A stretch of DNA of 64,000 bases, from contig NW_025766969.1 in the NCBI RefSeq assembly GCF_003918875.1, positions 2,790,001-2,854,000 of the forward strand, in the 5' to 3' direction. Source of the stretch: Haliotis rubra. Its lineage: Eukaryota. Shown piece by piece: positions 10,127-63,671 of this stretch (position 1 is its first letter; each line of letters opens with the position of its first letter). The translations under genes and the position numbers were made by a program. Under the pieces are notes generated by a model. The model ran no database searches, was not told where the DNA came from, and saw only the letters and a list, made by a program, of their open reading frames with translations.

Positions 10127-11170
10127 ATGAACCTCAGCCGTCAAGAAATTGACCTTTACCTTCGTCAACAAGACAACCAGTATGCAACTGAGGTTCTGCC
10201 TGTCATCTTGTTCCTCGCCATGCTGATGATTACTGGTGTTCTCGGCAATTCACTCGTCTGTTATGTATATCTCGTCAAGTTAAAACAAGGCACAACCCGA
10301 TATTTCATTTTAGCATTAGCGGTATACGATCTTGTCAACTGTTGCGTCTGTATTCCCGGTGAAATAGCAGACATGAGTCACAACTACACATTTGGTGGTA
10401 ATGGTTTATGCAAAATTATGCGTCTGCTCCTGTCATTCACATCCTACTCGTCAGTGACCGTACTTTTACTTGTGGCTTTTGACAGATACAGGAAAATATG
10501 CCAACCATTTCACAAACAGACTTCACCCAGATTTGCCAGGATCGCAATTACTGTATGTTCACTTTCTGCGTTCGTAGTGTCTTTGCCAAATGTCGCTCTC
10601 TATGGTTCAAGGACAATATCTACAAGTGACGGCCACGTCAACGGCTCCGACTGCACCACTGCCGACGAATACATCAGGACACCCTATCCTCTCATCTTTA
10701 ATGGAGTTGAGTTCATCGTCTTCATCATCTCAACCATCAGCCTTACTGTCCTCTACTTCCTTATATGGAAACGTATTGCCAGGCAACATGAATTCAGAAG
10801 AAGCGCTGGGTCAAGACAAATAAACGATGTCATACATTTAAGCATGAGAGATCCAAATAATTTTAACATATGCCCTTCACATGCAATGTCCGTACTGGAA
10901 AAGGGAGCGAAAAAGACGATATCAATGTTGCTTCTAATTACCCTGGTGTTTGTGCTGAGCTTTCTCCCCCACCTCTGTGTTATGGTCGCCAGAGCAGTCA
11001 ACAGCAATTTGTATGATGGCATTCATGGAGCTGGATTGATCGCCTATAATTTGTTCGTTAGATCGTATTTCTTCAACAGTGCCTGCAATCCAATCATATA
11101 CGGCTTCTGCAATGGGCAATTCCGTCTCGAACTTAGGCAAATATGGCGGAAATTGATGTGTCGAGCGTAA
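10127..11170 (+). CDS. GPCR1: orphan rhodopsin-like (class A) 7TM receptor, ~347 aa, single coding exon
   Basis: Seven hydrophobic segments: TM1 GN, TM2 LAxxD, TM3 Cys plus FDRY, ECL2 NGSDC, TM6 FVLSFLPH, TM7 NSACNPIIY. The start is placed at MNLS (ACCATGA) after the splice acceptor; the ORF track extends it to 10067. Confidence 0.93.
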   Translation: MNLSRQEIDLYLRQQDNQYATEVLPVILFLAMLMITGVLGNSLVCYVYLVKLKQGTTRYFILALAVYDLVNCCVCIPGEIADMSHNYTFGGNGLCKIMRLLLSFTSYSSVTVLLLVAFDRYRKICQPFHKQTSPRFARIAITVCSLSAFVVSLPNVALYGSRTISTSDGHVNGSDCTTADEYIRTPYPLIFNGVEFIVFIISTISLTVLYFLIWKRIARQHEFRRSAGSRQINDVIHLSMRDPNNFNICPSHAMSVLEKGAKKTISMLLLITLVFVLSFLPHLCVMVARAVNSNLYDGIHGAGLIAYNLFVRSYFFNSACNPIIYGFCNGQFRLELRQIWRKLMCRA

Positions 11171-11227
11171 ATGTGAGTTGGATTGAACACCGCTTTGAAA
11201 AGTACTGAAAAAAAACAATCAACTATG

Positions 11228-11475
11228 TTTTTTTGCTTGCTTGTTGTTAACGCCGCACTCAGCAATATTCCAGCTATATGGCGCAGGTCTGTAAATAATC
11301 GAGTCTGGACCAGACAATCTAATGATCAACATCATGAGCAGCGACCTACGCATTTTGGATACGATGACTATGTGTCTAACCAAGTCAGCGAGTCTGATTA
11401 CCCGATACCATCAGTCGCCTCTTACGACAAGCATGGGTTGCTGAAGACCAATTTCTAACCCGGATCTTCACGGGT
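11228..11475 (-). mobile_element. SINE family B (no complete tRNA head), full-length with imperfect TSD
   Basis: Reverse complement reads ACCCGTGAAGATCCGGGTTAGAAATTGGTCTTCAGCAACCCATGCTTGTCGTAAGAGGCGAC...GCTGGAATATTGCTGAGTGCGGCGTTAA. Flanks are ACAATCAACTATG (11215) and ACAATCAGCTGTG (11476). Confidence 0.85.
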
Positions 11476-17564: not shown

Positions 17565-18828
17565 CTACGATGCTTGTCGTATGCGACTAAACCTTTTCAC
17601 AACAGCCACGAGTTCCTGGCGAAACCGTGGGTTGCAGAAGCTGTAGATGATGGGGTTGAATGCACTGTTGATGAAGTAGGACTTGAAAAAGAAGTAGAAA
17701 GCACCAAACTGTGGCGTGTCAACTTTATCAAAGAATTCCTTGTTGACCGCTCTGGCTGCCATGAGACTCAAATGAGGCAGGAAGCTCAATACGAATGCCA
17801 AGGTTATCAGAAACAACATCAACGTTGTTTTCTTTACCGCTGCATCGCTCCTCTCGGGGGATGCGTTATTTGAGCGTTGTGACGTCGTTGGAACAGGATT
17901 CTCAACTTCTTTTTCAGATGGCACTTCGCTGGCTATATCGTCTGCAGGACACGAGGATGCGCATTCATTGTGAACATCAGATGTACGTTCCGTCGACGTC
18001 TCCAGTTCGCAAACAAACGCTGCATTGTCCTCATGATATACTGTTTCATGTTCCTGTCGAGATTTCGTCACACACCCAGTATCAGCTTCAACACATGAAC
18101 TCGAATGACATTTTCTAGATTGTGTCTTCAACTTCCGTCTGTAATTCCGCTGTTTTCTTATCCGACGCCATATAAGCGAATACAATACACTCAGTGATAC
18201 GGTCGTTGTAAGAAAAATGGTTAAATTGAATCCGTTGTAAATCAGTGGATATGGTGTCCCGACATATATATCAGGCGTGCTGCAGTCCGATCCATTAATG
18301 GCGGCAACGTCAGTGGTAACGGTCCGTGGTCCATAAAATACACTTGCAGGAATCCCCACCACAACCCCGACTGTGCAACAGGCACTAATGGCCATCTTGG
18401 CTGTTCGGATGTCCATCTGTTTCTGAAACGGCCGACATATCTTCTTTGTATCTATCCACGGCTACTGGTATGAGAACTAGGCCTGAAGACACTGACGTGA
18501 ATGTTACAAACACGCGCATCGTTTTACACATGATGACGTAAGACCCGAATGTGTAGCGATATCGCATATCTGCGATGTCAAATGGACAACTGACCACACA
18601 GTTTATTAGGTCAATGACCGCGAGGGACACAATGAAACATTTGACAGTGCTGGACTTAAACTTGACCAAATACACACAACAGACCAGGGAGTTGCCGATT
18701 ATGCCCGTTGTCATCAACACCGACACAAGCACGATAGCTGGTAGATATTTGTAGGCGTAGATGTCGTCATAACGACGTAGGTGGACGTTCACGTCGTGGT
18801 CGCTGAGGGTTGTGTTTGTGCCTGACAT
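17565..18828 (-). pseudogene. GPCR2: class A 7TM receptor with a single +1 frameshift (pseudogene or sequencing error)
   Basis: ORF 18385-18828 covers TM1-TM3 up to VDRYK and ORF 17565-18416 covers TM4-TM7 (NSAFNPIIY). Removing one T from TTT at 18445-18447 restores VDRYKKICRPFQKQMDIR and a 420-aa ORF. Acceptor TTCTTCCTAG has its AG at 18873-18874. Confidence 0.9.
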
Positions 18829-20422: not shown

Positions 20423-21896
20423 TACTCTCCCAAAAAAGAAACGCATATAGGAATTTCAACTCTATTTTTTATGTTTATTTTGAAACATCTTGTAGGCTTT
20501 ATGAGTCAATGAAATATAGCGAAATTGCAAACTGAGAATGCAGACTTATCCGTCTTTGGCACCAACTCGAGGAAAGTCAGTTTGAGTGTCACATGGAGAC
20601 GTGGGGTGGCGCTGAAGTCAATACCTCGTGTGACCACCGTGGGCATCCAGAACTGCACGGCATCGACTCGGCATCGAACGAATAAGTCTCAGAATCTCGT
20701 GTTGCCCAATCGCAAGCTCACCCTGCATGCAGTGCCTGTGCGAGTTGCTGAAGTGTCTGGGGCTGAGGGTTACGGCGTCGCACCCGTCTGTCCAGGGCAT
20801 CCCACAGATGTTCGATCGGGTTTTTAAAAGTCCGGTGATCTTGAGGGCCAGGGGAGCACATTGATGTTGTGGTTCTGGAGGAAGTCTCTAGTGTGACGTG
20901 CTGTGTGGGGCCTGGCATTGTCCTGTTGAAACAACTCCCTCTGGAGATCAATGATTGGAAGGAGGTGTGGGCGTAAGATTTGCGTCACAGTACCGTTGAG
21001 CTGTCAGGTTGCCCTGGATCATCGCCAAATCACTTCTCCTACGGCAGGTGATCCACCACACACACACACATCACACACACATCACTTCCCCGGCCGAATC
21101 TGTCCACCTGGGGAACGCAAGCGTCGGCGAAACGTTCACGTCGACGTCTGTACACCCGCATTCTTCCATCGCGTCGTTCCAATAGAAATCGGGATTCATC
21201 ACTGAACCAGATTCTACGCCAATTCGGTAGGTTCAGGCCTGAATGTTGGTGCACCATTGAACTCGATGTCGACGATATTGCGTAAACCAGCCTCTCTCAA
21301 CCTGTTCCTAGCGGTCTGTACAGCGGTCTGTGCAGCGGTCGATGACGCAGGTGATGTACCCGGATGTAGCGATCCTGCGCCGCAGTGGTCTCTCGAGGTC
21401 GCCCACTACGAGGGGCATCTGCTACCGAATTCTGCCAGCGATATCTCTCCCAGAGCCGTGAAATGGTGCTTTGGTGAACATTCATGCGTCGGGCAACTGC
21501 ACGTTGAGACTGGCCAGCTTCAAGCAAACCAATGGCGATATGACGGTTGGCTTCACTTAGACGTGGCATTTTGCGTTCGTCAACAATATTCCAAATACAG
21601 TGAATAATCGACAGACAGCGATCAACCTTTTATACCCATCATTGAGACTATCTGATCCCCAACTTTCACGTGCATTGCATGTGAATTGTGTATTCTGTGA
21701 CACTACACGCCGAAATTGAAAATCATGCTGTTAAATACGGGTATTTTACGGATGGTGCGTTTAGTTGTGATGTTTCAAAACATAAACACCATAGGACTCA
21801 TAAACAGAGCAAACCCTTTTGTAAAATGAATCACGTTTTAATTCATTGCTACATGAAACTGCTATTTTCATGATGTGTTTCTTTTTTGGGAGAGTA
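20423..21896 (-). mobile_element. Tc1/mariner (DD34E) transposon A, full length, transposase disrupted (20618-21569)
   Basis: TIR TACTCTCCCAAAAAAGAAAC(G/A)CAT at both ends, with TA TSD at 20421-22 and 21897-98. Peptides MPRLSEANRHIAIG..VHQSTISRLW..RSGRPR, WFSDESRF, NPIEHLWD and HGGHTRY lie in different frames. Confidence 0.95.
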
Positions 21897-22306
21897 TATA
21901 TAAAAGTTGTATTTGAGGAAGTATATCTAATGTCAGATGAGTGAAATATTTTTTCAGTGACTCAGCCAGCGGTGACCTAGATCCGCTTTCTTCACTTGTT
22001 TGCGAGGTTGTTGAGCGTGACGATGCCTTTTAACAACTACTAAAATAAACCCGCACAGACGGACAAGAAAACACTCATACATTAAAGGCCATGAAATGCC
22101 TCCCTCTCATGTCAAGTTGCCATGTCATGACCAAACAGAACGGCTGTTCATTGCGGCGTTAAGCCCTATATTTCCCATTGACACTGTACGCGTAAGGTAC
22201 ATCATAATTCCACATCTCGTTTACAAAGACTGTGGATATATTTCACTGGTATTTTGACATAATTTTTATTCTAGCAATTCAACCAGTAAGGAATGATTGT
22301 GAAATA

Positions 22307-22778: not shown

Positions 22779-22954
22779 TCATGACAGCCATGGGTGAGTC
22801 AGAGGTCGCCTCCCACAGGATCCCCCTTCAGTGTTCACGTACATACATAGAGCACTAAGGTCCTAATCTGACCCGGAATCCTTATGTGGTAGATACAGGA
22901 ATTGAGATGTCTTACTTATATTATCCCCCCGTAAGACAGATGTCCCTAGTATGT

Positions 22955-23850: not shown

Positions 23851-25507
23851 TCATGACTTATCCTACAGTCAGCCAAGCTGTACATCTCGTTGTAGTATCT
23901 AGGATGTATGATAGAGTTCAATACAACATTGAAGTCATGACTTATCCTACAGTCAGCCCAGCTGTACATCTCGTTGTAGTAATCTAGGATGTATGATAGA
24001 GTGCAATACAACATTGAAGTCATGACTTATCCTACAGTCAGCCCAGCTGTACATCTCGTTGTAGTATCTAGGATGTATGATTGAGTTCAATACAACATTG
24101 AAGTCATGACTTATCCTACAGTCAGCCCAGCTGTACGGGTAGCACATCTCGTTGTAGTATCTAGGATGTATGACAGAGTTCAATACAACATTGAAGTCAT
24201 GACTTATCCTACAGTCAGCCCAGCTGTACGGGTAGCACATCTCGTTGTAGTATCTAGGATGTATGATAGAGTTCAATACAACATTGAAGTCATAACTTAT
24301 CCTACAGTCAGCCCAGCTGTACGGGTAGCACATCTCGTTGTAGTATCTAGGATGTATGATAGAGTTCAATACAACATTGAAGTCATGACTTATCCTACAG
24401 TCAGCCCAGCTGTACGGGTAGCACATCTCGTTGTAGTATCTAGGATGTATGATAGAGTTCAATACAACATTGAAGTCATAACTTATCCTACAGTCAGCCC
24501 AGCTGTACGGGTAGCACATCTCGTTGTAGTATCTAGGATGTATGATAGAGTTCAATACAACATTGAAGTCATGACTTATCCTACAGTCAGCCCAGCTGTA
24601 CGGGTAGCACATCTCGTTCAGTATCTAGGATGTATGATAGAGTTCAATACAACATTGTACGGGTAGCACATCTCGTTGTAGTATCTAGGATGTATGATAG
24701 AGTTCAATACAACATTGAAGTCATAACTTATCCTACAGTCAGCCCAGCTGTACGGGTAGCACATCTCGTTGTAGTATCTAGGATGTATGATAGAGTTCAA
24801 TACAACATTGAAGTCATAACTTATCCTACAGTCAGCCCAGCTGTACGGGTAGCACATCTCGTTGTAGTATCTAGGATGTATGATAGAGTTCAATACAACA
24901 TTGAAGTCATAACTTATCCTACAGTCAGCCCAGCTGTACGGGTAGCACATCTCGTTGTAGTATCTAGGATGTATGATAGAGTTCAATACAACATTGAAGT
25001 CATAACTTATCCTACAGTCAGCCCAGCTGTACATCTCGTTGTAGTATCTAGGATGTATGATTGAGTGCAATACAACATTGAAGTCATGACTTATCCTACA
25101 GTCAGCCCAGCTGTACGGGTAGCACATCTCGTTGTAGTATCTAGGATGTATGATAGAGTTCAATACAACATTGAAGTCATAACTTATCCTACAGTCAGCC
25201 CAGCTGTACATCTCGTTGTAGTATCTAGGATGTATGAGAGAGTTCAATACAACATTGAAGTCATGACTTATCCTACAGTCAGCCCAGCTGTACGGGTAGC
25301 ACATCTCGTTGTAGTATCTAGGATGTATGATAGAGTTCAATACAACATTGAAGTCATGACTTATCCTACAGTCAGCCCAGCTGTACGGGTAGCACATCTC
25401 GTTGTAGTATCTAGGATGTATGATAGAGTTCAATACAACATTGAAGTCATGACTTATCCTACAGTCAGCCCAGCTGTACGGGTAGCACATCTCTTTGTAG
25501 TATATCC
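23851..25507. repeat. 93-bp minisatellite with an 84-bp variant, ~18 copies, immediately 3' of GPCR3
   Basis: Unit TCATGACTTATCCTACAGTCAGCCCAGCTGTAC[GGGTAGCAC]ATCTCGTTGTAGTATCTAGGATGTATGATAGAGTTCAATACAACATTGAAG; the bracketed 9 bp are optional. Confidence 0.97.
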
Positions 25508-25563: not shown

Positions 25564-26820
25564 TTAAGCTCGACACTTCATTTTTCTCCAAAGGCAGTAC
25601 AGTTCCCGTCGGAAATGTTCATTACAGAAGCTGTAGACAATGGGATTGGAAGCACTGTTAATGAAGTACGACCTCAGGAACAGATTGTAAGCCGTCATCG
25701 CAGCTCCACGGAGGTCGTCAAACACGTGTTTGTTGGCGGCCCTAGTCGCCATCAGCCCTAGATGGGGGAGAAAACTCAACACAAACACCAGTGTGATGAG
25801 GAACAGCATGAACGTTGTCTTCTGCCCTTTCTGACGTGGTGACGATGTGTTGGTGCTGGAAGACTTTAGTCCTTTTGACTTTGTCCCAGCAGACAGTGTA
25901 GTTGACTTGGGAGTCATAGCACTTGAACATCCACGTTCCTTCAATTTAGGATTGATTGTAAGTTCCATTGCCGTTCCACTGTGTCGAGGACAGCCGGTAT
26001 CCTTTATTGCCTTGTTCGCATCCCCTTCGGTTGATGAACTCAGAAAATCATCAGAGGTGTTATTCGTCTCGGATGATTGATTTCCCTGCGTTACCACTAT
26101 TTTCAGTGTTCTTCCACGGTTTTGCTGAGCCCTAACGCTTCTCCTGAAGGTCTGTTGTCGAACCACCTGCCGCCATATCAAACTGTAGAGCACAACGAGA
26201 GTCAGCGTTGAGGAAATGAAGACGATGAACTGGACTCCGTTGTAGATTAGAGGATACGGAGTCTTGATGTATTCATCAGCCGTAGAGCAGTCTGAGCCAT
26301 TCACGAGAACATCGTCTGTCGTCACAGTTCTCGAACCATAGAGAATGGCAGCCGGCAAAGACAAAATAAATGATACAAGTGAACAGATCATTATTGCGAC
26401 TTTAGCTACAAACGGAGTTGTCTGTCTTTTAAAGGGTCGACATATTTTCTTGTATCTGTCCACCGCTACTGCTACGAGCACGGCCCCTGACGACATGGAT
26501 GAGAACGTTACGAACACTCGCATTATTTTACAAAACCCGTACTGCCCGAACGTGTAGTTGAATCGCATGTCCGTTATCTCTACTGGAATACTGATGACAC
26601 AACTAATTAGGTCGAATACTGCCAGGGCCAAAATATAACAACGGGTTGTGCTGTGTTTAAATTTGAACGCATACACGTAGAAGACTAGTGTGTTGCCAAG
26701 CAACCCAGTCAACATCAAAACGACAAGGAACAAGATGGCGACCAGGACTTGCAGTGCGAACTCGTTGTCATAGCGACGAAGATAGACGTCGTGGTCTTCA
26801 TGGAAACTTAAGTTGTCCAT
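25564..26820 (-). CDS. GPCR3: orphan class A 7TM receptor, ~418 aa
   Basis: GN, LAVFD, VDRY, NGSDC, FVLSFLPH, NSASNPIVY; long Ser/Thr-rich ICL3. Start MDNLS follows acceptor TTTCTATTTTTCAG (AG at 26836-26837); the ORF track extends it to 26880. Confidence 0.94.
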   Translation of the reverse strand: MDNLSFHEDHDVYLRRYDNEFALQVLVAILFLVVLMLTGLLGNTLVFYVYAFKFKHSTTRCYILALAVFDLISCVISIPVEITDMRFNYTFGQYGFCKIMRVFVTFSSMSSGAVLVAVAVDRYKKICRPFKRQTTPFVAKVAIMICSLVSFILSLPAAILYGSRTVTTDDVLVNGSDCSTADEYIKTPYPLIYNGVQFIVFISSTLTLVVLYSLIWRQVVRQQTFRRSVRAQQNRGRTLKIVVTQGNQSSETNNTSDDFLSSSTEGDANKAIKDTGCPRHSGTAMELTINPKLKERGCSSAMTPKSTTLSAGTKSKGLKSSSTNTSSPRQKGQKTTFMLFLITLVFVLSFLPHLGLMATRAANKHVFDDLRGAAMTAYNLFLRSYFINSASNPIVYSFCNEHFRRELYCLWRKMKCRA

Positions 26821-35346: not shown

Positions 35347-35523
35347 GTTGGCATGTGTCGCTGAACGTGAATGCTGAAAGAGAGAATTAAACATGCGATA
35401 TAATTATCACAGTACATTATACGATTTAAATTAATATGCAAAATAGACCACACAAGTTAGCGAGAGCTGTTAATTCAGTTCATGTAAATGCCTTGAATAA
35501 ATATCTAACCTAGACATAGCAAA

Positions 35524-43798: not shown

Positions 43799-45037
43799 CT
43801 ATGTTCTGCGAGTTAACCCTCCAAACAGCCGTGTCACTTCAAGGCGGAACCGTTCGTTGCAGAAGCTGTAAATGATAGGATTGGATGCACTGTTGATAAA
43901 GTAGGATCTCAGAAACAAATTGTTAGCTGCTATTCCAGCTCCTGTAAGGTCGTCAAACACGTGTTTGTTGACAGCCTGCGTAGCCATCAGACCCAGATGA
44001 GGAAGGAAGCTCAAAACAAACACGAGGGTGATGAGAAACAGCATCAGTACTGTCTTATGACCTCTTTGACGCAGTGACGATGTGCCGGTAGGGGATTCGT
44101 TTCTTCCACACCTAGAGGGATGCCTGCCCGGTAGGGATGGTGTGTTACCATCTGGACATGAATCAGGTATACGTTCTGATCTTCTAGCAGGTATGTTGGA
44201 ATCACTTCTGTCGGAAGACAACAGGCTTGAATCCCATGTAACTGACGGACACTGGACATCGGATGATGAAGTATTAGGTATCATTTCGTGTCTGCTATCC
44301 ATTTCCACATTTTGTCTTATTTCATATACAGCATTCATTCGTTTCCGTTGCCTGACAACCTGCCTCCATATGAGACCGTAAAGCACAGAGAGACTGAGTG
44401 TTGAGGAGAAGAAGATGAAGAACAGGACTCCATTGTAGATGAGAGGGTAGGGCGTCCTGACGTAGTCGTCAGACGTAGAGCAGTCAGAACCATTAATATA
44501 GCCGTCGTCTGTTGCAACTGCCCTAGGACCATAGATAACAGCATTGGGTGATGAAACCACCACCGTCATAAGTGAACACACGATAACTGTAACCTTGGCA
44601 GACAAAGGCGTCATCTGCTTTTCAAACGGTCGGCATATTTTCCTATACCTGTCCACGGCTATGGCTACCAGTGTTGACGCTGAAGCAATGGCTGAGAATG
44701 TTACAAGTAATCGCAATATCTTACACAGTGTGTACGGCCCAAATGTATAGTTATGCCGTATGTCTGCGATCTCTGATGGAATACAAATGGTGACTGTAAT
44801 CAGGTCAAATGTAGCCAGTGCTACAATAAAGCATCGGGTGGCACTTTGTTTAAATTTCACAAGATACACATAACAGACGAGGGAATTCCCCACAAGCCCA
44901 ACGATCATCAACACAGCCAGAAACAAAATGGCGGGCAAGGCCTGTAGGGCGTATCTGTTGTCATAGCGACGAAGGTAAACGTCAGGGTCCTGTTGATTGA
45001 CACTGACGTTCACGTCGACCATTAACTTCATTGACAT
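43799..45037 (-). CDS. GPCR6: orphan class A 7TM receptor, 412 aa
   Basis: GN, LATFD, VDRY, NGSDC, FVLSFLPH, NSASNPIIY. Acceptor TTTTATTCTTCAG (AG at 45048-45049) lies 10 nt before the ATG; candidate donor GAG|GTAAGA at 45475-45476. Confidence 0.95.
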   Translation of the reverse strand: MSMKLMVDVNVSVNQQDPDVYLRRYDNRYALQALPAILFLAVLMIVGLVGNSLVCYVYLVKFKQSATRCFIVALATFDLITVTICIPSEIADIRHNYTFGPYTLCKILRLLVTFSAIASASTLVAIAVDRYRKICRPFEKQMTPLSAKVTVIVCSLMTVVVSSPNAVIYGPRAVATDDGYINGSDCSTSDDYVRTPYPLIYNGVLFFIFFSSTLSLSVLYGLIWRQVVRQRKRMNAVYEIRQNVEMDSRHEMIPNTSSSDVQCPSVTWDSSLLSSDRSDSNIPARRSERIPDSCPDGNTPSLPGRHPSRCGRNESPTGTSSLRQRGHKTVLMLFLITLVFVLSFLPHLGLMATQAVNKHVFDDLTGAGIAANNLFLRSYFINSASNPIIYSFCNERFRLEVTRLFGGLTRRT

Positions 45038-49344: not shown

Positions 49345-50582
49345 CTATTTCCTTTTACAAATCAGTCGGAGTTCGCGGCGGAACTGCTTATTAAGAAAGC
49401 CATAGATAATGGGGTTGGCAGCGATCTGCAGGTGATAGGATTTTTCTAGGATGGAGAAAAGGGAGTACTTCATGGCGAGGCGTTCGTAGTTCTGAGGGTC
49501 TCTTGACATCATTGTTGTGACTGTGAAATAGGGAACACAACTCAGGACGTACACCATCGTCACCAGAAACAACGTCAACGTCATCTTTCTGACACCCTTA
49601 TCATGTGACGCGTTCCTGACGTCACTTCCGGTTCGGACAGACATTGGCAGCGATGAATTTGTGGTTGTTGAATCATTATGGCTGTGCATTTCTGAACTAG
49701 GGTCAGATACCATAACAGAAGTTGAAGCAGTATTTATGTGAGAGGTCTCCGAACAAGGGGAAGGAACACCTACAGAGGTTGGGGTTAAATCATGTCTACA
49801 TGTTGAAGTGTCTTCAGATTCATATGTATCCTGAGACGAATTAAATTTTACACCTCCTTCGACTTGGCTCCCTTTCTTATGCTCTGGGGGACGACAAATC
49901 TCTTCCACCGGATTTGATGCTTTTAATTTCTGTATGTACTTCAATTGCTGATAGACCCGACACCAGATACAGGAATACAGAACACCAAGGGAGGTAACCA
50001 GACCGAACAACATGAAGATCCAAAAGTAAGTGTACGCCTTATAGTAGTCCTCTCTGGCTCGAAGGGGCGACAAATGGTAATATTGACATTATATCGTGTC
50101 ACAGTTTTAGGGCCGTAAATCAGTGGAGTCGGAATCATGAGCACCAGCAAGACGAGACACAAAAGTCCACAAGCCAGTTTGGCTGTATATGGCGTCATCT
50201 GCTTCTGGAAGGGTCGACAAACCTTCCTGTATCTGTCAACGGCCACTAATATTAACACCTGACCAGACGCAGTGCTGAAATATGTCACACTCGTTATCAT
50301 GAACCTACACGCCCCTGAACTGCCAAACGTTACAAAGTTTCTCATCTGAAATATTTGTACTGGACAACATACTAGAGCATTGAGAATATCCAAAAGGGCA
50401 ACCACAAGAATGAAACACCTTGTTGTGCTCGGCTTGAACTTCTTCAGGTATACATGAAAGACAACAGAATTGCCCACGAGGCCAACCACCATCATGGCCG
50501 ATATGTACACTGTAGCAGGAAGGTATCGCTGGTTGTAGACGTCGTTGAACTGATCAAGGGTGAAGTTGACAGCAGTTGCCAT
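49345..50582 (-). pseudogene. GPCR7: subgroup-2 class A receptor with a single -1 frameshift (pseudogene or sequencing error)
   Basis: ORFs 49941-50582 and 49345-50073. GGGG at 50064-50067 corresponds to GGGGG in GPCR8/9; adding one base restores ICRPLRARE and 412 aa, the same length as GPCR9. Confidence 0.92.
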
Positions 50583-51000: not shown

Positions 51001-52519
51001 AACTCTGTCAAAAGAAACGCAACCCCTGTCCTCAGATATGAAAAATTCGTTTGAATGAAGTTATTGCTTCAAACTAAATTTTATTCGAATGTATTGAAAT
51101 GATACACGTAATTAATGAAGATTACCATCCAAACAACTGCATTTGTACGCATAAGTGTATTTTATTGCTTATTCCGTCACAACGCATGAAATGACCCTCA
51201 TGGTGACTTCGCACAAAAACACATGCAAATCATGAAAATGGCAGTTAATGTAGGGGTGTATAAAGCCCATGTGCTTCCGTATTATATTCATTCATTTGTC
51301 GCCGAAAAGCTGTGTTAAAATGCCACGATTGAGTGCTGCCGACCGAAATATCGCCATTGGTCGTGTTCAAGCCGGAGAAAGTTTTGGAACTGTTGCACGG
51401 CACCTAAATGTTCACAAAACAACGATATCCCGACTTTGGAGCCGCTACAACAACTTCAATTTGACCAACGATCGCCCGAGAAGTGGAAGGCCAAGAATCA
51501 CGACCCCCCTTCAAGATCGGTACATCCGGGTCCATCACCTGCGTAATCGGCATGCCCTACCAACCGTGACTCCCCACACAAATACCAGGTTTGAGGAGAG
51601 TGTCAGCTCAAACGATTAGGAACCGTCTGAAAGAAGCGGGTTTACGTGCCTGTAGACCAGTTGTTGGACCTGTACTACGCCCCCTACATCGACGCCGACG
51701 ACTCAGGTGGTGCAACAACGTAAGGATACGGACTTTACAAAACTGGAGGCGAATCTGGTTTTCTGATGAATCACGTTTTCTTTTGCAACGTCACGACGGA
51801 AGACAGCGTCTGTATAGGAGACGTCATAAACGTTTTGCGCCCATCTGCGTCCGACAGGTGGACAGATTTGGCGGAGAAAGCGTCATGGTTTGGGGAACCA
51901 TCTCATACAACCAGAAATCAGACTTGGTGATCGTTCCAGGGAACCTGACAGCCCAACGTTACATCAACCACGTGTTACAGCTTCACCTTCTCCCGATTAT
52001 TGACCAACAGACACAGATATTTCAACGGGACAACGCCCGGCCTCATACTGCACGTGCAACAATGAACTTTCTGCAGAATTCCAACGTCAATGTCTTGCCA
52101 TGACCCTCTAAATCACCAGACCTCAACCCTATTGAACACCTGTGGGATACTCTGGATCGACGCGTACGTCAACGTCAGCCGCCGCCACAGACGCTGCAAC
52201 AGCTCGCCGTTGCACTGCAGGAGGAGTGGAGAGCCATTCCCAGGAAAGAATCCGGCGTCTTATCCGTTCTTGTCCAAGGAGATGCCGTGCAGTGATTGTA
52301 GCGCGTGGTGCTCATACGAGATACTGAGAAAGACGCCCCCTGGTGACAAACTGGTGTCTGTGAGATGACTTTTGAAATGACAATTTTAAACATGCCCATC
52401 TGGGTTATTATTCTGCCAAATTTCAGACTTCTGTCTTAAATAATAAAATGCCGTGTCGTCCTAAAACTTCAGATCAAAATCTCTAAAATACAGGGGTTGC
52501 GTTTCTTTTTGACAGAGTT
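51001..52519 (+). mobile_element. Tc1/mariner (DD34E) transposon B, full length, transposase disrupted (51320-52327)
   Basis: TIR AACTCTGTCAAAA(A)GAAACGCAACCCCTGT, with TA TSD at 50999-51000 and 52520-52521. Peptides MPRLSAADRNIAIG, RSGRPR, WFSDESRF, QRDNARPH, LP*PSKSPDLNPIEHLW and GAHTRY. An empty site exists in the paralogous flank at 63954-63955. Confidence 0.96.
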
Positions 52520-55367: not shown

Positions 55368-58300
55368 CTTTAAAGATGCTTAAATGTCTTAATTTGAGTG
55401 ATCACTAATCTTAGAAGGATATATTTAATATTTTGGAAAATTCACTCATGAATAATTCCCTACACCTTGATTGTTCCCAAACAAACCAATACCTACGTAG
55501 GTAAAGTAGCTTTTCAAATATTTGAGGCCCATGTAATCCTACCATGTTGATCTAAGCCCAAATCTCTGAATAAAATGACAGGTTATATTTGAAACTCAAA
55601 CATTTAATAGAACTGTGGGAGAAAGATTTTTTCGATTTTACAAAGCAACTATCTATAGGCATAGGAAAGCTTTTGGAATTACGTTTGTACTGACTTCGAC
55701 CCTGACAATCTATTTGAAAATATAATTCCTAAATAGCTAAAAAACTAGGATAAGTAATTCAGATTGAAGTCGTTGTACTTCCACATTCATGATGTTTTGT
55801 TTACCACGACTTCAGTTTTGCAGCAATTAATTCACTTGTTACAAAAAGATGCCAGTACATCATCTCCTGTAAGCCAACTACAGAATCAGAAAACAAATCA
55901 TCGGCACCTACCAATACATATACATATAATTCTAGGAAGTCTTCACCTTCAAAATGCCGATGCCACCATGTAGATGTAATTCGTCTTCAAGTTGATCGAT
56001 AAACATGGAGAATATGCAACCTTGTCTGACAAAACTGAAGCAATCCAAATATTCTGAAATGGTAATAGTAGTTTAAGAGTAGATATCGCCAATGATGTTT
56101 ACCATTTTACCAAGGCTAGTTTGCTTCAATAAGATATACCATAAGAAGTCTCTGTTCATAGAATCACACAAATTAGATTGGTTTGGTTGTTTAACGCCAG
56201 ACTCAGCAATATTCCAGCAACATTTGTATATAGCGGCGGTCTGTAAATAATCGAGTGTGGACCAGATAAACTCGATAATTACACATACAGACAGTAGAAT
56301 CTATCCGTATTTTTGAATCAGTGAGTGAAGTGTGAAAACTTTATCAACTGTTGAGTATCATTTACGAAAACATGCCCGACATTCTGGGTATTTATTATAC
56401 AATCTACAAAATACTTCATTTTGTTGTTAAGAATATCTAACATTTTACTATCAATATCCATCAGGATCATTCAGGTTGACTGTCTTATACTTCTACATAG
56501 GAATATCTAAAATAGAATTTAAAATACTGTTAAAACATACATGTTAGTTGCGGTAACAACATGTCACCTCCATGTTTCCGCATCTGGGGTATCCCATCAG
56601 GTCCTTAGCCCCCCATTGACATCATGTGTGGTACTGTTTAGAATTGAATTGTTGCTTTTTTTGTACGTAATCGAACACATTGTCTGACTTGCTACGATAA
56701 TGACTTAAGTAAGTGAACACCACTCTGAAAGGTTTCAGTGAGTGAGTGAGTATGGTTTTACGCCGCGCTTAGCAATATTCCAGCAATGTCACGACGGGGG
56801 ACACAAGAAATGGTCTTCACACATTGTACCAATGTGGGGTATCGAACACGGGTCTTGGCCTGACGAGCTAACGCTTTATCCGCTAGGCTAACCCACAGTC
56901 CCCTGAAGGGTTTCAGGTGAGGTTGTCCAGTGGTTAATGCGTACGCTCAAAACGCCGAAGACCCAACAGAGCTACAAAGTTGGTTTCCCCGCCATGACAT
57001 TGCTGGCATATGGTGAAAAGCGCCATAAAACCATACTCGCTGATGGGTTTGAGGGAAGAGGTAAGCATCAACCACCGATCACTCACTCACCGATCGTTAA
57101 TCCGGAGTTTATTTCCCCATTAAAGAGTCATCTTGACTGAGGCAAAAGCTGTTCAAACCGGTTGTTAAACTCTCACAACATAAAGAGATGTCGCTTCTAT
57201 TAAGGAACTATTTTATTATTGTAAGTGCTATAAGTAAATAAGAACAGTAACATGCAGACTAATCAGAATGGGTGAAATTTACAGGTGGAAACAGTCATCT
57301 AGTTCCACAGATGTCAGATGTCTTTCAACTTATATCTCACTTGTTCACTCATTATTTCCTTTTACAAATCAGTCGGAGTTCGCGGCGGAACTGCTTATCA
57401 AGAAAGCCATAGATAAAGGGGTTGGCAGCGATCTGCAGGTGATAGGACTTTTCTAAGATGGAGAAAAGGGAGTACTTCATGGCGAGGCGTTCGTAGTTTT
57501 TAGGATCTCTTGACATCATTGTTGTGACTGTGAAATAGGGAACACAACTCAGGACGTACACCATCGTCACCAGAAACAACGTCAACGTCATCTTTCTGAC
57601 ACCCTTATCATGTGACGCGTTCCTGACGTCACTTCCGGTTCGGACAGACATTGGCAGCGATGAATTTGTGGTTGTTGAATCATTTCGGCTGTGCATTTCT
57701 GAACTAGGGTCAGATACCATAACAGAAGTTGAAGCAGTATTTATGTGAGAGTTCTCCGAACAAGGGCAAGGAACACTTACAGAGGTTGAGGTTAAATCAT
57801 GGCTACAAGGTGAAGTATGTTGAGATTCGTATGTATCCTGAGACGAATTCAATTTTACGCCTCCTTCGACTTGGCTCTGATTCATTTTCCTATGCTTTTT
57901 GGGACCACCGACGCGTTCCACCCGATTTGATGCTTTTAATTTCTGCATGTACTTCAATTGCTGATAGACCCGACACCAGATACAGGAATACAGAACACCA
58001 AGGGAGGTAACCAGACCGAACAACATGAAGATCCAAAAGTAAGTGTACGCCTTATAGTAGTCCTCTCTGGCTCGCAGGGGGTGACAGATGGTAATATTGA
58101 CATTATATCGTGTCACAGTTTTAGGGCCGTAAATCAGTGGAGTCGGAATCATGAGCACCAGCAAGACGAGACACAAAAGTCCACAAGCCAGTTTGGCTGT
58201 ATATGGCGTCATCTGCTTCTGGAAGGGTCGACAAACCTTCCTGTATCTGTCAACGGCCACTAATATTAACACCTGACCAGACGCAGTGCTGAAATATGTC

Positions 58301-58645
58301 ACACTCGTTATCATGAACCTACACGCCCCTGAACTGCCAAACATTACAACGTTTCTCATCTGAAATATTTGTACTGGACAACATAATAGGGCATTGAGAA
58401 TATCCAGAAGGGCAACCACAAGAATGAAACACCTTGTTGTGCTCGGCTTGAACTTCTTCAGGTATACATGAAAGACAACAGAATTGCCCACGAGGCCCAC
58501 CACCATCATGGCCGATATGTACACTGTAGCAGGAAGGTATCGTTTGTTGTAGACGTCGTTGAACTGATCAAGGGTAAAGTTGACAGCAGTTGCCATGCCT
58601 CCTGTAGATGTGTGTCACCCGGAACTTAAATCAGAAAGTATTTCT
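55368..58645. repeat. segmental duplication unit carrying GPCR8 (partner 61057-63715)
   Basis: TTTAAAGATGC(T/A)TAAATGTCT.AATTTGAGTGATCACTAATCTTAGAA begins both copies. Both share the divergent SINE-A pair (56738-57040 vs 61808-62110). The segment 55664-56287 is absent from the partner. Confidence 0.92.
57352..58596 (-). CDS. GPCR8: subgroup-2 orphan class A 7TM receptor, 414 aa
   Basis: GN, VALLD, VDRY, NITIC, YVLSCVPY, QIAANPFIY; intact ORF with the acceptor 5 nt before the ATG. Confidence 0.95.
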   Translation of the reverse strand: MATAVNFTLDQFNDVYNKRYLPATVYISAMMVVGLVGNSVVFHVYLKKFKPSTTRCFILVVALLDILNALLCCPVQIFQMRNVVMFGSSGACRFMITSVTYFSTASGQVLILVAVDRYRKVCRPFQKQMTPYTAKLACGLLCLVLLVLMIPTPLIYGPKTVTRYNVNITICHPLRAREDYYKAYTYFWIFMLFGLVTSLGVLYSCIWCRVYQQLKYMQKLKASNRVERVGGPKKHRKMNQSQVEGGVKLNSSQDTYESQHTSPCSHDLTSTSVSVPCPCSENSHINTASTSVMVSDPSSEMHSRNDSTTTNSSLPMSVRTGSDVRNASHDKGVRKMTLTLFLVTMVYVLSCVPYFTVTTMMSRDPKNYERLAMKYSLFSILEKSYHLQIAANPFIYGFLDKQFRRELRLICKRK

Positions 58646-60495: not shown

Positions 60496-61052
60496 GACAG
60501 ACAGACAGACAATACTTTATTACCTTAAAAGGAATTCGTTTTGGTTCACAGAGCTTGACAAAAATACAAATGAATAACAGTATAAAATATGACATTACTA
60601 AAAACATAAAAAGAGATAAATATGTGCTTAAATAAAAATAAATGATAGCTGGACATTCAACATTTGTTTAAAATTGCAAAACTTTGAGGTACAAAAGACG
60701 TTCGATCTCGTTTAGTCTTGGTGATTGGCACTGTATAGCGGCGGCCCGAAGGTAAAAGCTTATACTCTAGATTTAGAAAATGTGTTGTGTCATTAATGAT
60801 TTATTCAGACGTTGAAAGTACTTGCCGCTCATAGAGAAGTGAAAGATTAACGAAAGTGACCCCGGCTATTTTACTAGCTGTATTTACAATTTTGTTAAGT
60901 TTGGATTTGTTTTTGACTGAAAGAGACTCGAACCAGCACTGAGAAGAGAAAGTGAGTACACTCAGAATAAAAGTAGTATAAAACAACATCATAACAGATT
61001 GGGAAACGTTAAAAGATCGCAGTTTGCGCAGTAGATGGAGGTGTTGTTGACA
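60496..61052 (-). mobile_element. Rex1/Babar-like LINE 3' fragment
   Basis: Minus strand reads LHLLRKLRSFNVS..MMLFYTTFILSVLTFSSQCWF..KLNKIVNTASKIAG and LLPSGRRYTVP..RTSFVP. An AATAAA and a (TGTC)n tail lie near 60496-60522. Confidence 0.8.
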
Positions 61053-62432
61053 TTTACTTTAAGATGCATAAATGTCTAAATTTGAGTGATCACTAATCTT
61101 AGAAAACCATGTGTGGATATATTTAATTTTTGGAAAATTCACTCATGAATAATTCCCTACACCTTGATTGTTCCCAAACAAACCAATACCTACATAGGTA
61201 AAGTAGCTTTTTAAATATTTGAGGCCCATGTAATCCTACCATGTTGATCTAAGCCCAAATCTCTGAATAAAATGGCAGGTTCTATTTGAAACTCAAACAT
61301 TTAATAGAACTGTGGGAGAAAGATTGTTTCGATTTTACAAAGCAACTATCTATAGGCATACAGACAGTAGAATCTATCCGTATTTTTTAATCAGTGAGTG
61401 AAGTGTGAAAACTTTATCAACTGTTGAGTAGCCTTTACGAAAACATGCCTGACATTCTGGGTATTTATTATACAATCTACAAAATACTTCATTTTGTTGT
61501 TAAGAATATCTAACATTTTACCATCAATATCAATCAAGATCATTCAGGTTGACTGTCTTATACTACTACATAGGAAAATCTAAAATAGAATTTAAAATAC
61601 TGCTAAAATATACATGTTAGTTACCGTAACAAGATATCACCTCCATGTTTCCGCATCTGGGGTATCCCATCAGGTCCTTAGCCCCCCTTTGACATCATGT
61701 GTGGTACTGTTTAGAATTGTATTGCTTTTTTTGTATGTAATCGAACACATTGTCTGACTTGCTACGATAATGACTCTAAGTAAGTGAACACCACTCTGAA
61801 AGGTTTCAGTGAGTGAGTGAGTATGGTTTTACGCCGCGTTTAGCAATATTCCAGCAATGTCACGACGGGGGACACAAGAAATTGTCTTCACACATTGTAC
61901 CAATGTGGGGTAGGTAACACGGGTCTTGGCCTGACGAGCTAACGCTTTATCCGCTAGGCTAACCCACAGTCCCCTGAAGGGTTTCAGGTGAGGTTGTCGA
62001 GTGGTTAAAGCGTACGCTCAAAACGCCGAAGACCCAACAGAGCTACAAAGTTGGTGTCCCCGCCATGACATTGCTGGCATATGGTGAAAAGCGCCATAAA
62101 ACCATACTCGCTGATGGGTTTGAGGGAAGAGGTAAGCATCAACCACCGATCACTCACTCACCGATCGTTAATCCGGAGTTTACTTCCCCATTAAAGAGTC
62201 ATCTTGACTGAGGCAAAAGCTGTTCAAACCGGTTGTTAAACTCTCACAACATAAAGAGATGTCGCTTCTATTAAGGAACTATTTTATTATTGTAAGTAAA
62301 TAAGAACAGTACTACATGCAGACTACTCAGAATGGGTGAAATTTACAGGTGGAAACAGTCGTCTAGTTCCAAAATTCCCAGACTGTCACCGACGTCAGAT
62401 GTCTTTCAACTTATATATCACTTGCTCACTCA

Positions 62433-63671
62433 CTATTTCCTTTTACAAATCAGTCGGAGTTCGCGGCGGAACTGCTTATTAAGAAAGCCATAGATAATGG
62501 GGTTGGCAGCGATCTGCAGGTGATAGGACTTTTCTAGGATGGAGAAAAGGGAGTACTTCATGGCGAGGCGTTCGTAGTTTTTAGGGTCTCTTGACATCAT
62601 TGTTGTTACTGTGAAATAGGGAACACAACTCAGGACGTACACCATCGTCACCAGAAACAACGTCAACGTCATCTTTCTGACACCCTTATCATGTGACGCG
62701 TTCATGACGTCACTTCCGGTTCGGACAGACATTGGCAGCGATGAATTTGTGGTTGTTGAATCATTATGGCTGTGCATTTCTGAACTAGGGTCAGATACCA
62801 TAACAGAAGTTGAAGCAGTATTTATGTGAGAGGTCTCCGAACAAGGGGAAGGAACACCTACAGAGATTGGGGTTATATCATGTCTACATGTTGAAGTGTC
62901 TTCAGATTCATATGTACCCTGAGACGAATTCAATTTTACGCCTCCTTCGACTTGGCTCCCTTTCTCATGCTCTTGGGGACGACAAATCTCTTCAACCCGA
63001 TTTGATGCTTTTAATTTCTGCATGTACTTCATTTGCTCATAGACCCGACACCAGATACAGGAATACAGAACACCAAGGGAGGTAACCAGACCGAACAACA
63101 TGAAGATCCAAAAGTAAGTGTACGCCTTATAGTAGGCCTCTCTGGCTCGCAGGGGGCGACAAATGGTAATATTGACATTATATCGTGTCACAGTTTTAGG
63201 GCCGTAAATCAGTGGAGTCGGAATCATGAGCACCAGCAAGACGAGACACAAAATTCCACAAGCCAGTTTGGCTGTATATGGCGTCATCTGCTTCTGGAAG
63301 GGTCGACAAACCTTCCTGTATCTGTCAACGGCCACTAATATTAACACCTGACCAGACGCAGTGCTGAAATATGTCACACTCGTTATCATGAACCTACACG
63401 CCCCTGAACTGCCAAACATTACAACGTTTCTCATCTGAAATATTTGTACTGGACAACATAATAGAGCATTGAGAATATCCAGAAGGGCAACCACAAGAAT
63501 GAAACACCTTGTTGTGCTCGGCTTGAACTTCTTCAGGTATACATGAAAGACAACAGAATTGCCCACGAGGCCCACCACCATCATGGCCGATATGTACACT
63601 GTAGCAGGAAGGTAACGTTTGTTGTAGACGTCGTTGAACTGATCAAGGGTGAAGTTGACAGCAGTTGCCAT
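62433..63671 (-). CDS. GPCR9: subgroup-2 orphan class A 7TM receptor, 412 aa
   Basis: Same motifs as GPCR7/8 (VDRY, YVLSCVPY, QIAANPIIY); intact ORF. Confidence 0.95.
   Translation of the reverse strand: MATAVNFTLDQFNDVYNKRYLPATVYISAMMVVGLVGNSVVFHVYLKKFKPSTTRCFILVVALLDILNALLCCPVQIFQMRNVVMFGSSGACRFMITSVTYFSTASGQVLILVAVDRYRKVCRPFQKQMTPYTAKLACGILCLVLLVLMIPTPLIYGPKTVTRYNVNITICRPLRAREAYYKAYTYFWIFMLFGLVTSLGVLYSCIWCRVYEQMKYMQKLKASNRVEEICRPQEHEKGSQVEGGVKLNSSQGTYESEDTSTCRHDITPISVGVPSPCSETSHINTASTSVMVSDPSSEMHSHNDSTTTNSSLPMSVRTGSDVMNASHDKGVRKMTLTLFLVTMVYVLSCVPYFTVTTMMSRDPKNYERLAMKYSLFSILEKSYHLQIAANPIIYGFLNKQFRRELRLICKRK

What the first reader, a model, noticed from the sequence alone, without database searches (positions are those of the whole stretch)
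10127..63671. Nine-gene tandem array of single-coding-exon orphan class A GPCRs: candidate lineage-specific chemosensory or peptide-receptor cluster
Seen: nine paralogues in 54 kb with no other host gene between them, eight co-oriented, all with uninterrupted coding exons and short glycosylated N-termini. They form an old divergent set (1-6) and a young triplet (7-9), and two copies are disrupted. Established: tandem arrays of intronless class A receptors with birth-and-death turnover typify chemoreceptor repertoires (vertebrate ORs, TAARs), whereas conserved neuropeptide receptors are usually low-copy and often intron-containing. Inference: automated pipelines would probably call these CCK/orexin-receptor-like, but the architecture suggests an uncharacterised expanded sensory or signalling family. 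The array may continue past the right edge.
Basis: partly seen in the sequence, partly recalled or inferred. Interest (0 to 1): 0.8.

Follow-up and report, generated by a model that had tools for sequence, protein, structure and literature searches.

The report
Abalone orphan peptide-type receptor gene array
This stretch of blacklip abalone DNA holds nine neighbouring single-exon genes for cell-surface receptors of unknown ligand, an abalone-specific branch of a mollusc-wide receptor family; gene clusters of this kind are already described in molluscs, so it is a tidy example, not a new kind of thing.

Summary
The window (Haliotis rubra QXJH01000030.1, 2,790,001-2,854,000) carries nine class A (PF00001) GPCR genes, each with an uninterrupted ORF. 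Eight are co-oriented, and only transposon remnants and satellites lie between them.

Two corrections:
- The array does not continue to the right. An RDD-domain gene follows g9, as in H. cracherodii.
- The g7 frameshift is contradicted by the only short-read contig that crosses it. The g2 break is unverified.

The array is old within the genus. Order and one-to-one orthologues are kept in H. asinina and H. cracherodii, with local turnover: triplication of set B in H. rubra, a g6 duplicate in H. cracherodii, and g4/g5 gene conversion.

All Haliotis members form one clade apart from other gastropods (moderate support). None is an orthologue of CCK, orexin or NPFF receptors. Public names are inconsistent and several public models are chimeras.

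The 7TM core is under purifying selection (dN/dS 0.09-0.24), while ICL3 drifts. Fold, ECL2 hairpin and disulfide look peptide-receptor-like.

A chemosensory role could not be tested because no RNA run holds the genes. Tandem lineage-specific class A expansions in molluscs are published (Cummins 2009; Koene 2024; Nath 2025). The scan also noted another class A array elsewhere in this genome (s1-335194). Verdict: a new member of a known kind.

The parts
10127..11170 (+). g1: intact 347-aa class A GPCR with a short ICL3 (39 aa), and the only gene on the + strand (tail-to-tail with g2)
   Evidence: ORF. PF00001 E 1.6e-36. An inverted 78%-identical orthologue sits at the same end of the H. cracherodii array.
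17565..18828 (-). g2: GPCR split by a 1-nt insertion just after DRYK (about 18,436). The N part is 18388-18828 and the C part 17568-18416.
   Evidence: Intact orthologues exist in H. asinina (P0021, 92%) and H. cracherodii (425 aa). 7TM-core dN/dS is 0.12, so the break is recent or an error. Not rechecked with reads.
25564..26820 (-). g3: intact 418-aa GPCR
   Evidence: Orthologues: H. asinina P0006 (89%) and H. cracherodii P0007 (82%).
33997..35394 (-). g4: intact GPCR (449 aa from the Met at 35346, or 465 aa from 35394)
   Evidence: Orthologue: H. asinina P0009 (82-85%). No separate orthologue in H. cracherodii.
34072..34251 (-). Gene-conversion tract (TM6-TM7) in g4. Its partner tract in g5 is at about 39405-39584.
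   Evidence: g4/g5 nucleotide identity is 98-99% here against 63-85% elsewhere, and 89-93% to the H. asinina orthologue. H. asinina g4/g5 show the same pattern.
39330..40592 (-). g5: intact 420-aa GPCR
   Evidence: Orthologues: H. asinina P0008 (86%), H. cracherodii P0003 (74%).
43799..45037 (-). g6: intact 412-aa GPCR. This is the gene that was modelled.
   Evidence: AF2 pLDDT 80.9, 7TM plus H8, ECL2 hairpin. Orthologues: H. asinina (82%) and two H. cracherodii copies (71-72%).
49345..50582 (-). g7: set-B GPCR with a 1-nt deletion at 50062-50063 in the assembly
   Evidence: A short-read contig from the same sample reads the intact frame at this site and lacks the g8/g9-specific differences. 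Core dN/dS against g8/g9 is 0.21-0.33.
57352..58596 (-). g8: intact 414-aa set-B GPCR
62433..63671 (-). g9: intact 412-aa set-B GPCR and the last gene of the array. It is not called in the public gene set.
20718..21629 (-). Tc1/mariner-type transposase remnant between g2 and g3
   Evidence: HTH_38 and related hits; ORFs.
51254..52365 (+). Tc1/mariner-type transposase remnant between g7 and g8
   Evidence: HTH_Tnp_Tc3_2 at 2.3e-11 and DDE_3.
23882..25503 (.). 93-bp minisatellite (about 16 copies) directly downstream of the g3 stop. It produces spurious long ORFs on both strands.

Best explanation
The window holds a bounded tandem array of nine orphan rhodopsin-class GPCR genes, each coded by a single uninterrupted exon. 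It belongs to an abalone-specific (Haliotis) branch of a mollusc-wide receptor family.

The array predates the split of H. rubra, H. asinina and H. cracherodii. It is flanked on one side by a conserved RDD-domain gene. It evolves by local birth-and-death: set B was triplicated in H. rubra, g6 was duplicated in H. cracherodii, and g4/g5 is two genes or one depending on species. It also shows gene conversion (TM6-TM7 of g4/g5).

Each protein is a canonical 7TM receptor. It has a glycosylation sequon in a short N-terminus, a TM3-ECL2 disulfide stapling an ECL2 beta-hairpin, DRY and NPxxY motifs for G-protein coupling, Phe in place of the W6.48 toggle, and a long, disordered, Ser/Thr-rich ICL3 that drifts almost neutrally.

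Inferred: ligands bind in the extracellular half of the helix bundle, which is the more variable half, and are most likely peptides or similar polar molecules (about 0.6). Whether they are the animal's own peptides or hormones (my slight preference, about 0.45) or external or conspecific water-borne cues (about 0.3) is not resolved by sequence.
For: - Identity as class A GPCRs: PF00001 E 1e-28 to 1e-36. The AF2 model shows 7TM plus H8. The nearest solved folds are all peptide receptors, namely orexin-1, QRFP, NPFF2, opioid, ghrelin, Y2 and CCK1.
- Motifs and invariant C3.25/ECL2 Cys.
- Single ORFs. Orthologue models align as one HSP over the full length.
- Synteny and boundaries.
- Haliotis-only clade of 38 rows (SH-aLRT 90), with one-to-one intra-genus orthologues.
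- Selection: orthologue dN/dS is 0.16-0.35 overall, 0.09-0.24 in the core and 0.45-1.0 in ICL3.
- Gene conversion.
- Extracellular TM halves are more variable than intracellular halves (1.48 vs 1.10 bits, p = 5e-4).
- No specific affinity to any solved receptor family. The profile E-values fall smoothly from NPFF1 6e-36 through OX2R 2e-34 and GHSR 4e-31 to NMUR1, AT1R and CCK1R at about 1e-30.
Against: - There is no expression evidence at all, so function in any tissue is unproven.
- Support for the Haliotis-only clade is moderate. The position of set B rests on a join of long branches.
- A tree against deorphanised protostome receptors could not be built here, so membership of a protostome-only peptide-receptor family (for example FMRFamide-receptor-like) is not excluded.
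- The peptide-ligand inference rests on resemblance only (fold neighbours at 17-22% identity, ECL2 hairpin).
Confidence: 0.75

Rival explanations
1. Chemosensory repertoire: the array encodes receptors for external cues such as food, settlement or pheromone molecules, expressed in tentacles, epipodium, osphradium or larvae.
For: - Tandem, single-exon, lineage-restricted paralogues with copy-number turnover and gene conversion.
- Higher variability in the extracellular TM halves.
- Young duplicates show relaxed or elevated dN/dS of 0.53-0.72.
- The same architecture marks the candidate chemoreceptors of Aplysia (PMC2700072) and the lophotrochozoan LSEs (PMC11886862).
Against: - No expression data.
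- Small family: at least 16 in H. rubra among the listed hits.
- One-to-one orthologues are kept across species at dS 0.27-0.50, with core dN/dS 0.09-0.24.
- The TM3-ECL2 disulfide is retained, whereas gastropod LSEs are reported to lack it (PMC11886862).
- A long phosphorylatable ICL3 is unlike the compact vertebrate ORs and TAARs.
- Lineage-specific expansion also occurs in endogenous peptide receptors (Lymnaea FMRFamide-R-like, PMC11589774).
Confidence: 0.3
2. They are true orthologues of a conserved bilaterian neuropeptide receptor (CCK/sulfakinin, orexin/allatotropin or NPFF/SIFamide), as the RefSeq names suggest.
For: The best solved-structure matches are NPFF2, orexin and CCK-A. RefSeq names include 'CCK receptor type A-like' and 'orexin receptor type 2-like'.
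Against: - Matches are weak: single-sequence E 1e-18 to 1e-25, 17-22% identity.
- The matches fall off smoothly across many unrelated peptide and amine receptors.
- Names given to close paralogues and orthologues contradict each other: CCK-A, orexin-2, bombesin-3, D1 and D2 dopamine, alpha-2D, NPS, C5a, OR14L1.
- The nearest feature-space clusters are mollusc-only.
- The Haliotis genes form their own clade.
Confidence: 0.04
3. The array is largely decaying: most copies are non-functional relics of a past expansion.
For: Two of nine copies carry frameshifts in the assembly. ICL3 evolves near neutrally. No RNA holder was found.
Against: - Seven ORFs are intact.
- Core dN/dS is 0.09-0.24 over dS 0.27-0.50, which shows sustained purifying selection.
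- Even g7 and g2 show constrained cores.
- The g7 break is not seen in the one short-read contig that crosses it.
- Class A motifs are invariant across 34 sequences.
Confidence: 0.03

Closest known systems
Lineage-specific expansions (LSEs) of class A GPCRs in Lophotrochozoa (Nath et al., bioRxiv 10.1101/2024.07.14.603414; Mol Biol Evol 2025, PMC11886862)
   Same: Class A receptors form taxon-specific paralogue clades with no orthologues between families or orders. One-to-one orthologues are found mainly within a genus. Genes are tandemly clustered, with some pseudogenes and higher entropy in the extracellular TM segments. The preprint's supplementary figure S2 covers the genus Haliotis.
   Different: This family keeps the TM3-ECL2 disulfide cysteines invariant, whereas the paper reports that gastropod LSEs lack that linkage. 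Orthology within the genus is nearly complete here, and the core is clearly constrained. Whether these particular genes were classed as LSEs there could not be checked, because no supplement is held.
Aplysia candidate chemoreceptors AcCRa/b/c (Cummins et al. 2009, PMC2700072)
   Same: Rhodopsin-type, mostly single-exon, clustered genes a few kb apart in one orientation, with retroelements between them and some pseudogenes. AcCRc shows length variation in ICL3.
   Different: AcCRa/b carry an ERC motif within a conserved FERCLCIA block, whereas these genes have DRY. AcCR proteins are mostly 319-364 aa, against mostly 412-450 aa here. AcCR genes have shown rhinophore and tentacle expression. No expression evidence exists here.
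FMRFamide-receptor-like tandem expansions in Lymnaea and other gastropods (Koene et al. 2024, PMC11589774)
   Same: Peptide-type rhodopsin GPCRs in tandem groups of 4-26 genes interspersed with repeats. H. rubra was in their orthology dataset. The authors read them as endogenous peptide receptors.
   Different: The classification there rests on an NCBI conserved-domain label that I could not apply here. That expansion is euthyneuran and far larger (about 450 genes).
Human NPFF, orexin, QRFP and CCK receptors (solved structures)
   Same: These are the best sequence and fold matches. Shared features are the ECL2 beta-hairpin with a TM3-ECL2 disulfide, and the DRY and NPxxY motifs.
   Different: Only 17-22% identical, with no preferential match to one family. 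The CWxP toggle is SFLP, there is no P5.50 or W4.50, and ICL3 is much longer. They are not orthologues.

Membership tests
Rhodopsin-class (class A) GPCR, Pfam PF00001 | 7tm_1 profile match above the gathering score | tested here: met
   All nine score 100-127 bits for intact genes, and both halves of the split genes pass 30.5 bits.
Rhodopsin-class (class A) GPCR, Pfam PF00001 | Seven helices plus helix 8; N1.50, D2.50, DRY and NPxxY motifs; C3.25-ECL2 Cys pair | tested here: met
   AF2 model; alignment invariants N51, D78, C105, D129-R130, C186, N386-P387-Y390.
Rhodopsin-class (class A) GPCR, Pfam PF00001 | CWxP toggle in TM6, P5.50, W4.50 | tested here: not met
   TM6 reads S-F-L-P, 5.50 is Ser and 4.50 is Cys. 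These are common but not obligatory class A features, so membership stands.
Lophotrochozoan class A lineage-specific expansion (candidate chemosensory LSE, PMC11886862) | Taxon-specific paralogue clade without orthologues in other gastropod families or orders | tested here: met
   38 Haliotis rows form one side of a branch (SH-aLRT 90), next to a Gigantopelta-only clade (100). Support is moderate, and only hits with named species were used.
Lophotrochozoan class A lineage-specific expansion (candidate chemosensory LSE, PMC11886862) | Tandem genomic clustering, with some pseudogenes | tested here: met
   Nine genes in 54 kb and seven in the H. cracherodii array. Pseudogene status of g7 is doubtful.
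Lophotrochozoan class A lineage-specific expansion (candidate chemosensory LSE, PMC11886862) | Extracellular TM segments more variable than the rest | tested here: met
   1.48 vs 1.10 bits, Mann-Whitney p = 5e-4.
Lophotrochozoan class A lineage-specific expansion (candidate chemosensory LSE, PMC11886862) | Gastropod LSEs reported to lack the TM3-ECL2 disulfide | tested here: not met
   C105 and C186 are invariant in 34 sequences. This is a reported trend, not a definition.
Lophotrochozoan class A lineage-specific expansion (candidate chemosensory LSE, PMC11886862) | Expression in chemosensory tissue | not testable with these tools
   No RNA run holds the g5-g6 stretch.
Conserved bilaterian neuropeptide receptors (CCK/SK, orexin/AT, NPFF/SIFa) | One-to-one orthology with a deorphanised receptor, with a clearly best match to one family | tested here: not met
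   Smooth E-value gradient across NPFF, orexin, ghrelin, NMU, AT1, CCK and amine receptors. RefSeq names contradict each other. A tree with protostome deorphanised receptors could not be built.
Biogenic amine receptors | Asp at 3.32 | tested here: not met
   Position 3.32 is Leu or Val in all nine, counted from C3.25 and R3.50.
Aplysia AcCRa/b chemoreceptors (PMC2700072) | ERC motif within the conserved (F/W)ITAF(I/V)TFERCLCIA block at TM3/ICL2 | tested here: not met
   These genes have AVDRY(K/R)KIC. The motif is taken from the paper.
Vertebrate-type olfactory receptors, Pfam PF13853 | 7tm_4 profile above the gathering score | tested here: not met
   Only g3 gives a sub-threshold hit, 26.6 bits against a cut-off of 27.

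The most novel reading that the evidence does not exclude
The array could be a small, conserved set of receptors for water-borne peptide or protein cues, such as spawning or aggregation pheromones or settlement inducers. On this reading the strongly diverged set B (28-37% identical to its neighbours, triplicated only in H. rubra) would be a receptor that acquired a new ligand class inside the array. That would give abalone a tractable receptor set for cues that matter in aquaculture and recruitment.
Probability: 0.2. Interest if true: 0.55.

Novelty: new member of a known kind. Interest (0 to 1): 0.25.

Why it matters
It gives a cleanly bounded, three-species-comparable example of how a mollusc orphan receptor cluster turns over: duplication, gene conversion confined to TM6-TM7, a neutral ICL3 and a constrained core. 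It also exposes concrete annotation errors. Public models fuse g7+g6 and g2+g3, and fuse set B with g6 in H. asinina. g9 is uncalled, and the family names are misleading. If ligands were found, the set could bear on abalone peptide signalling or chemical ecology. As a class of finding it repeats published surveys.

Tried and rejected
- Expression: the look-up of sequencing runs returned no RNA holder for g5-g6, so tissue specificity and UTR introns could not be examined.
- A tree against deorphanised bilaterian or protostome receptors was not possible. No tool delivered those sequences as usable ids, and long sequences may not be pasted in.
- I did not run the large representative search. Its top-150 unnamed hits would almost certainly all be mollusc paralogues and would not settle orthology.
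- The third word-based protein search was left unused for the same reason.
- An exact-sequence look-up of g9 found no called gene.
- The supplement of PMC11886862 is not held, so I could not see whether these genes are in its LSE lists or how many H. rubra LSEs it counts.
- Rejected readings: amine receptor (no D3.32), vertebrate-type OR (sub-threshold 7tm_4), AcCRa/b membership (DRY instead of ERC), and continuation of the array past the right edge.
- The long ORFs at 23.9-25.5 kb are read-throughs of a 93-bp minisatellite, not genes.


Full report
**What is there**

The window is Haliotis rubra GCA_003918875.1, contig QXJH01000030.1, positions 2,790,001-2,854,000. ORF listing and Pfam scans confirm nine rhodopsin-class receptors (PF00001) at the reported places:
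- g1 10127-11170 (+)
- g2 17565-18828 (-)
- g3 25564-26820 (-)
- g4 33997-35394 (-)
- g5 39330-40592 (-)
- g6 43799-45037 (-)
- g7 49345-50582 (-)
- g8 57352-58596 (-)
- g9 62433-63671 (-)

Seven are complete single ORFs of 347-465 aa. Gaps between genes are 3.2-7.2 kb.

The spacers hold the following:
- two Tc1/mariner transposase remnants
- a zf-RVT retroelement fragment
- a 93-bp minisatellite abutting the g3 stop
- a 20-bp repeat array
- eleven copies of a tRNA-like SINE head

No other Pfam-recognisable host gene lies between the receptors. The public gene calls for this contig list none.

**Paralogue structure**

g1-g6 are 42-69% identical to each other. g7-g9 are 93-96% identical. The two sets share only 28-37%. 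The triplet repeat unit is short: 1.6-2.4 kb at 93-95% nucleotide identity, essentially the ORF with small flanks.

All nine have these features:
- a sequon in a 17-30 aa N-terminus, and a second conserved sequon directly before the ECL2 cysteine
- N1.50, D2.50, C3.25, DRY, the ECL2 Cys and NPxxY
- S-F-L-P in place of CWxP
- no P5.50, no W4.50 and no D3.32
- an ICL3 of 94-139 aa (39 aa in g1) with 22-31% Ser+Thr (13% in g1)

**The two disrupted copies**

Both breaks are single-base indels. g2 has one extra base just after DRYK. g7 has one missing base beside a C-run in ECL2.

I laid short-read contigs of the probable source sample on g7 at 98% or higher likeness. The only contig crossing the site (240 nt) carries A>C at 50062 and an added G after 50063. 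That restores the frame seen in g8 and g9. The contig lacks the other g8- and g9-specific differences in that stretch, so it comes from g7. The g7 frameshift is therefore an assembly error or one allele only.

g2 could not be rechecked. Its core dN/dS of 0.12 against an intact H. cracherodii orthologue means any inactivation is very recent. Other follow-ups in this genome also met suspect one-base breaks.

**Boundaries and synteny**

Fetching the contig beyond the window shows no GPCR after g9. An RDD-domain gene starts about 3.2 kb further on.

In H. cracherodii (JAJLRC010000001.1, 10.065-10.140 Mb) the same RDD gene is followed by g6a, one set-B gene, g6b, one g4/g5-type gene, g3 and an intact g2. 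A g1-like gene follows in inverted orientation.

In H. asinina (CM074528.1, about 32.49-32.52 Mb) the order is set B, g6, g5, g4, g3.

So the array, including the very divergent set B, predates these species. The lineage-specific events are:
- triplication of set B in H. rubra (dS 0.036-0.062)
- duplication of g6 in H. cracherodii (dS 0.032)
- two g4/g5 genes in H. rubra and H. asinina, against one in H. cracherodii

**Phylogeny**

The tree has 92 rows: the nine genes plus species-named hits (IQ-TREE quick, LG+C20). It puts 38 Haliotis sequences on one side of a branch (SH-aLRT 90). Beside them are a Gigantopelta-only clade (100) and a clade that looks like one copy per gastropod species.

Inside the Haliotis clade, g2-g6 and set B each have one-to-one orthologues in the other abalone species. 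The g1 orthologue was found by tblastn only. The placement of set B involves long branches and should be read with care.

At least 16 clade members are in H. rubra, on several contigs. Two H. cracherodii members that I looked up are single-exon singletons, at 13.3 and 32.6 Mb on the same chromosome.

Set B has almost no detectable relatives by word search. One H. cracherodii protein reaches 74%, and the next hit is at 30%.

**Selection and conversion**

Orthologue pairs give dS of 0.27-0.30 (rubra-asinina) and 0.40-0.50 (rubra-cracherodii), with whole-gene dN/dS of 0.16-0.35.

Split by region, the 7TM core gives 0.09-0.24 and ICL3 gives 0.45-1.0. Within the triplet the core gives 0.21-0.33, and ICL3 exceeds 1 on small counts.

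In TM6-TM7, g4 and g5 are 98-99% identical at the nucleotide level, against 63-85% elsewhere. This is higher than g4's identity to its H. asinina orthologue (89-93%). H. asinina g4/g5 show the same local identity. The TM5 resemblance of g4 to g6 (87%) is weaker and older.

Across 34 Haliotis sequences, the extracellular halves of the helices are more variable than the intracellular halves (1.48 vs 1.10 bits, p = 5e-4). TM3, TM4, TM5 and ECL3 lead.

**What kind of receptor**

Single sequences match NPFF2, orexin and CCK-A receptors at only E 1e-18 to 1e-25.

The family profile gives NPFF1 6e-36, OX2R 2e-34, GHSR 4e-31, and NMUR1, AT1R and CCK1R at about 1e-30, followed by amine and adenosine receptors. 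This is a smooth gradient without a preferred family. The top NPFF2 value (2.8e-45) is inflated by a fusion partner aligned to ICL3.

An AlphaFold2 model of g6 (pLDDT 80.9) shows 7TM plus H8, an ECL2 beta-hairpin and a disordered ICL3. Its best solved-structure neighbours are all peptide receptors, at 17-22% identity. Feature-space neighbours are mollusc-only clusters with arbitrary automatic names.

RefSeq names for close relatives contradict each other: CCK-A-, orexin-2-, bombesin-3-, D1/D2 dopamine-, alpha-2D-, NPS- and C5a-like, and OR14L1.

Several public models are chimeras:
- a 576-aa 'CCK receptor type A-like' that joins g7 pieces to g6
- an 888-aa model with two 7tm_1 domains that spans g2 and g3
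- an 807-aa H. asinina model that spans set B and g6

g9 is not called at all.

**Interpretation**

Shown:
- a conserved, bounded, single-exon tandem array of orphan class A receptors
- abalone-specific at the family level
- under purifying selection in the core
- turning over by duplication and conversion

Inferred:
- peptide-type ligands bound in the variable extracellular pocket
- G-protein coupling through DRY and NPxxY
- regulation through a phosphorylatable ICL3

The chemosensory reading is possible but has no direct support. Several features fit endogenous peptide receptors at least as well: retained disulfide and hairpin, long ICL3, near-complete intra-genus orthology, core constraint and modest family size. 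Lineage-specific tandem expansions of endogenous-type peptide receptors are documented in gastropods (PMC11589774).

**Comparison with what is known**

Tandem, mostly single-exon, lineage-specific class A clusters in molluscs were described in three studies:
- Aplysia (PMC2700072)
- Lymnaea, with tandem groups of 4-26 genes and H. rubra in the orthology dataset (PMC11589774)
- 238 lophotrochozoan genomes, with the genus Haliotis in the preprint's supplementary figure S2 (10.1101/2024.07.14.603414 and PMC11886862)

The present array fits that kind, apart from keeping the TM3-ECL2 disulfide that gastropod LSEs are said to lack. The scan itself noted another five-gene class A array elsewhere in this genome (s1-335194; not tested here).

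The verdict is a well-resolved new member of a known kind. The value lies mainly in the corrected annotation and the three-species turnover picture.

Noticed in passing
window 43799-50582; window 17565-26820; L009:1-3850 (H. asinina): Public gene models are chimeras bridging neighbouring receptors. A 576-aa H. rubra 'CCK receptor type A-like' joins g7 pieces to g6. An 888-aa model with two 7tm_1 domains spans g2 and g3. An 807-aa H. asinina model spans set B and g6. g9 is not called at all.
   Followed up: partly
window 2974, 31656, 35535, 41154, 49009, 52673, 53793, 56872, 59084, 61943, 61992: Eleven copies of a tRNA-like SINE head (21-mer GGTAGCCTAGTGGTTAAAGCG, up to 3 mismatches; none expected by chance). 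Word depth in short-read contigs is in the tens of thousands at 48967-49100. Several copies sit just outside receptor ORFs and could have served as substrates for unequal crossing-over.
   Followed up: partly
window 23882-25503: A 93-bp minisatellite (about 16 copies, 94-98% matches) starts about 60 bp downstream of the g3 stop. It produces spurious ORFs of 186-290 aa on both strands.
   Followed up: yes
window 41880-42788: A 20-bp tandem repeat of about 47 copies lies between g5 and g6.
   Followed up: no
window 1555-2382: A 55/110-bp satellite array lies upstream of the gene array, in the 10 kb where no gene was called.
   Followed up: no
window 46699-48298: A retroelement fragment (zf-RVT domain, 47807-48298, minus strand) with an adjacent local duplication: 46699-47368 matches 47397-48069 at 97.8%.
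   Followed up: partly
L001:997-2256 and L001:15624-16883 (H. cracherodii): Two g6-type genes, 96% identical (dS 0.032), flank the single set-B gene. This is a recent duplication that moved a copy across set B to the RDD-gene side of the array. It is absent in H. rubra.
   Followed up: partly
window about 66,858-68,596 (beyond the window; L008:1-1739) and L005:1-4146: An RDD-domain (PF06271) gene on the opposite strand bounds the array in both H. rubra and H. cracherodii. One exon is 86% identical between them.
   Followed up: partly
window: ECL2 of all nine genes (e.g. g6 residues 182-186): A conserved N-x-S/T sequon sits immediately before the disulfide cysteine of ECL2: N-G-S-x-C in set A and N-I-T-I-C in set B. 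This suggests a glycan at the tip of the ECL2 hairpin.
   Followed up: no
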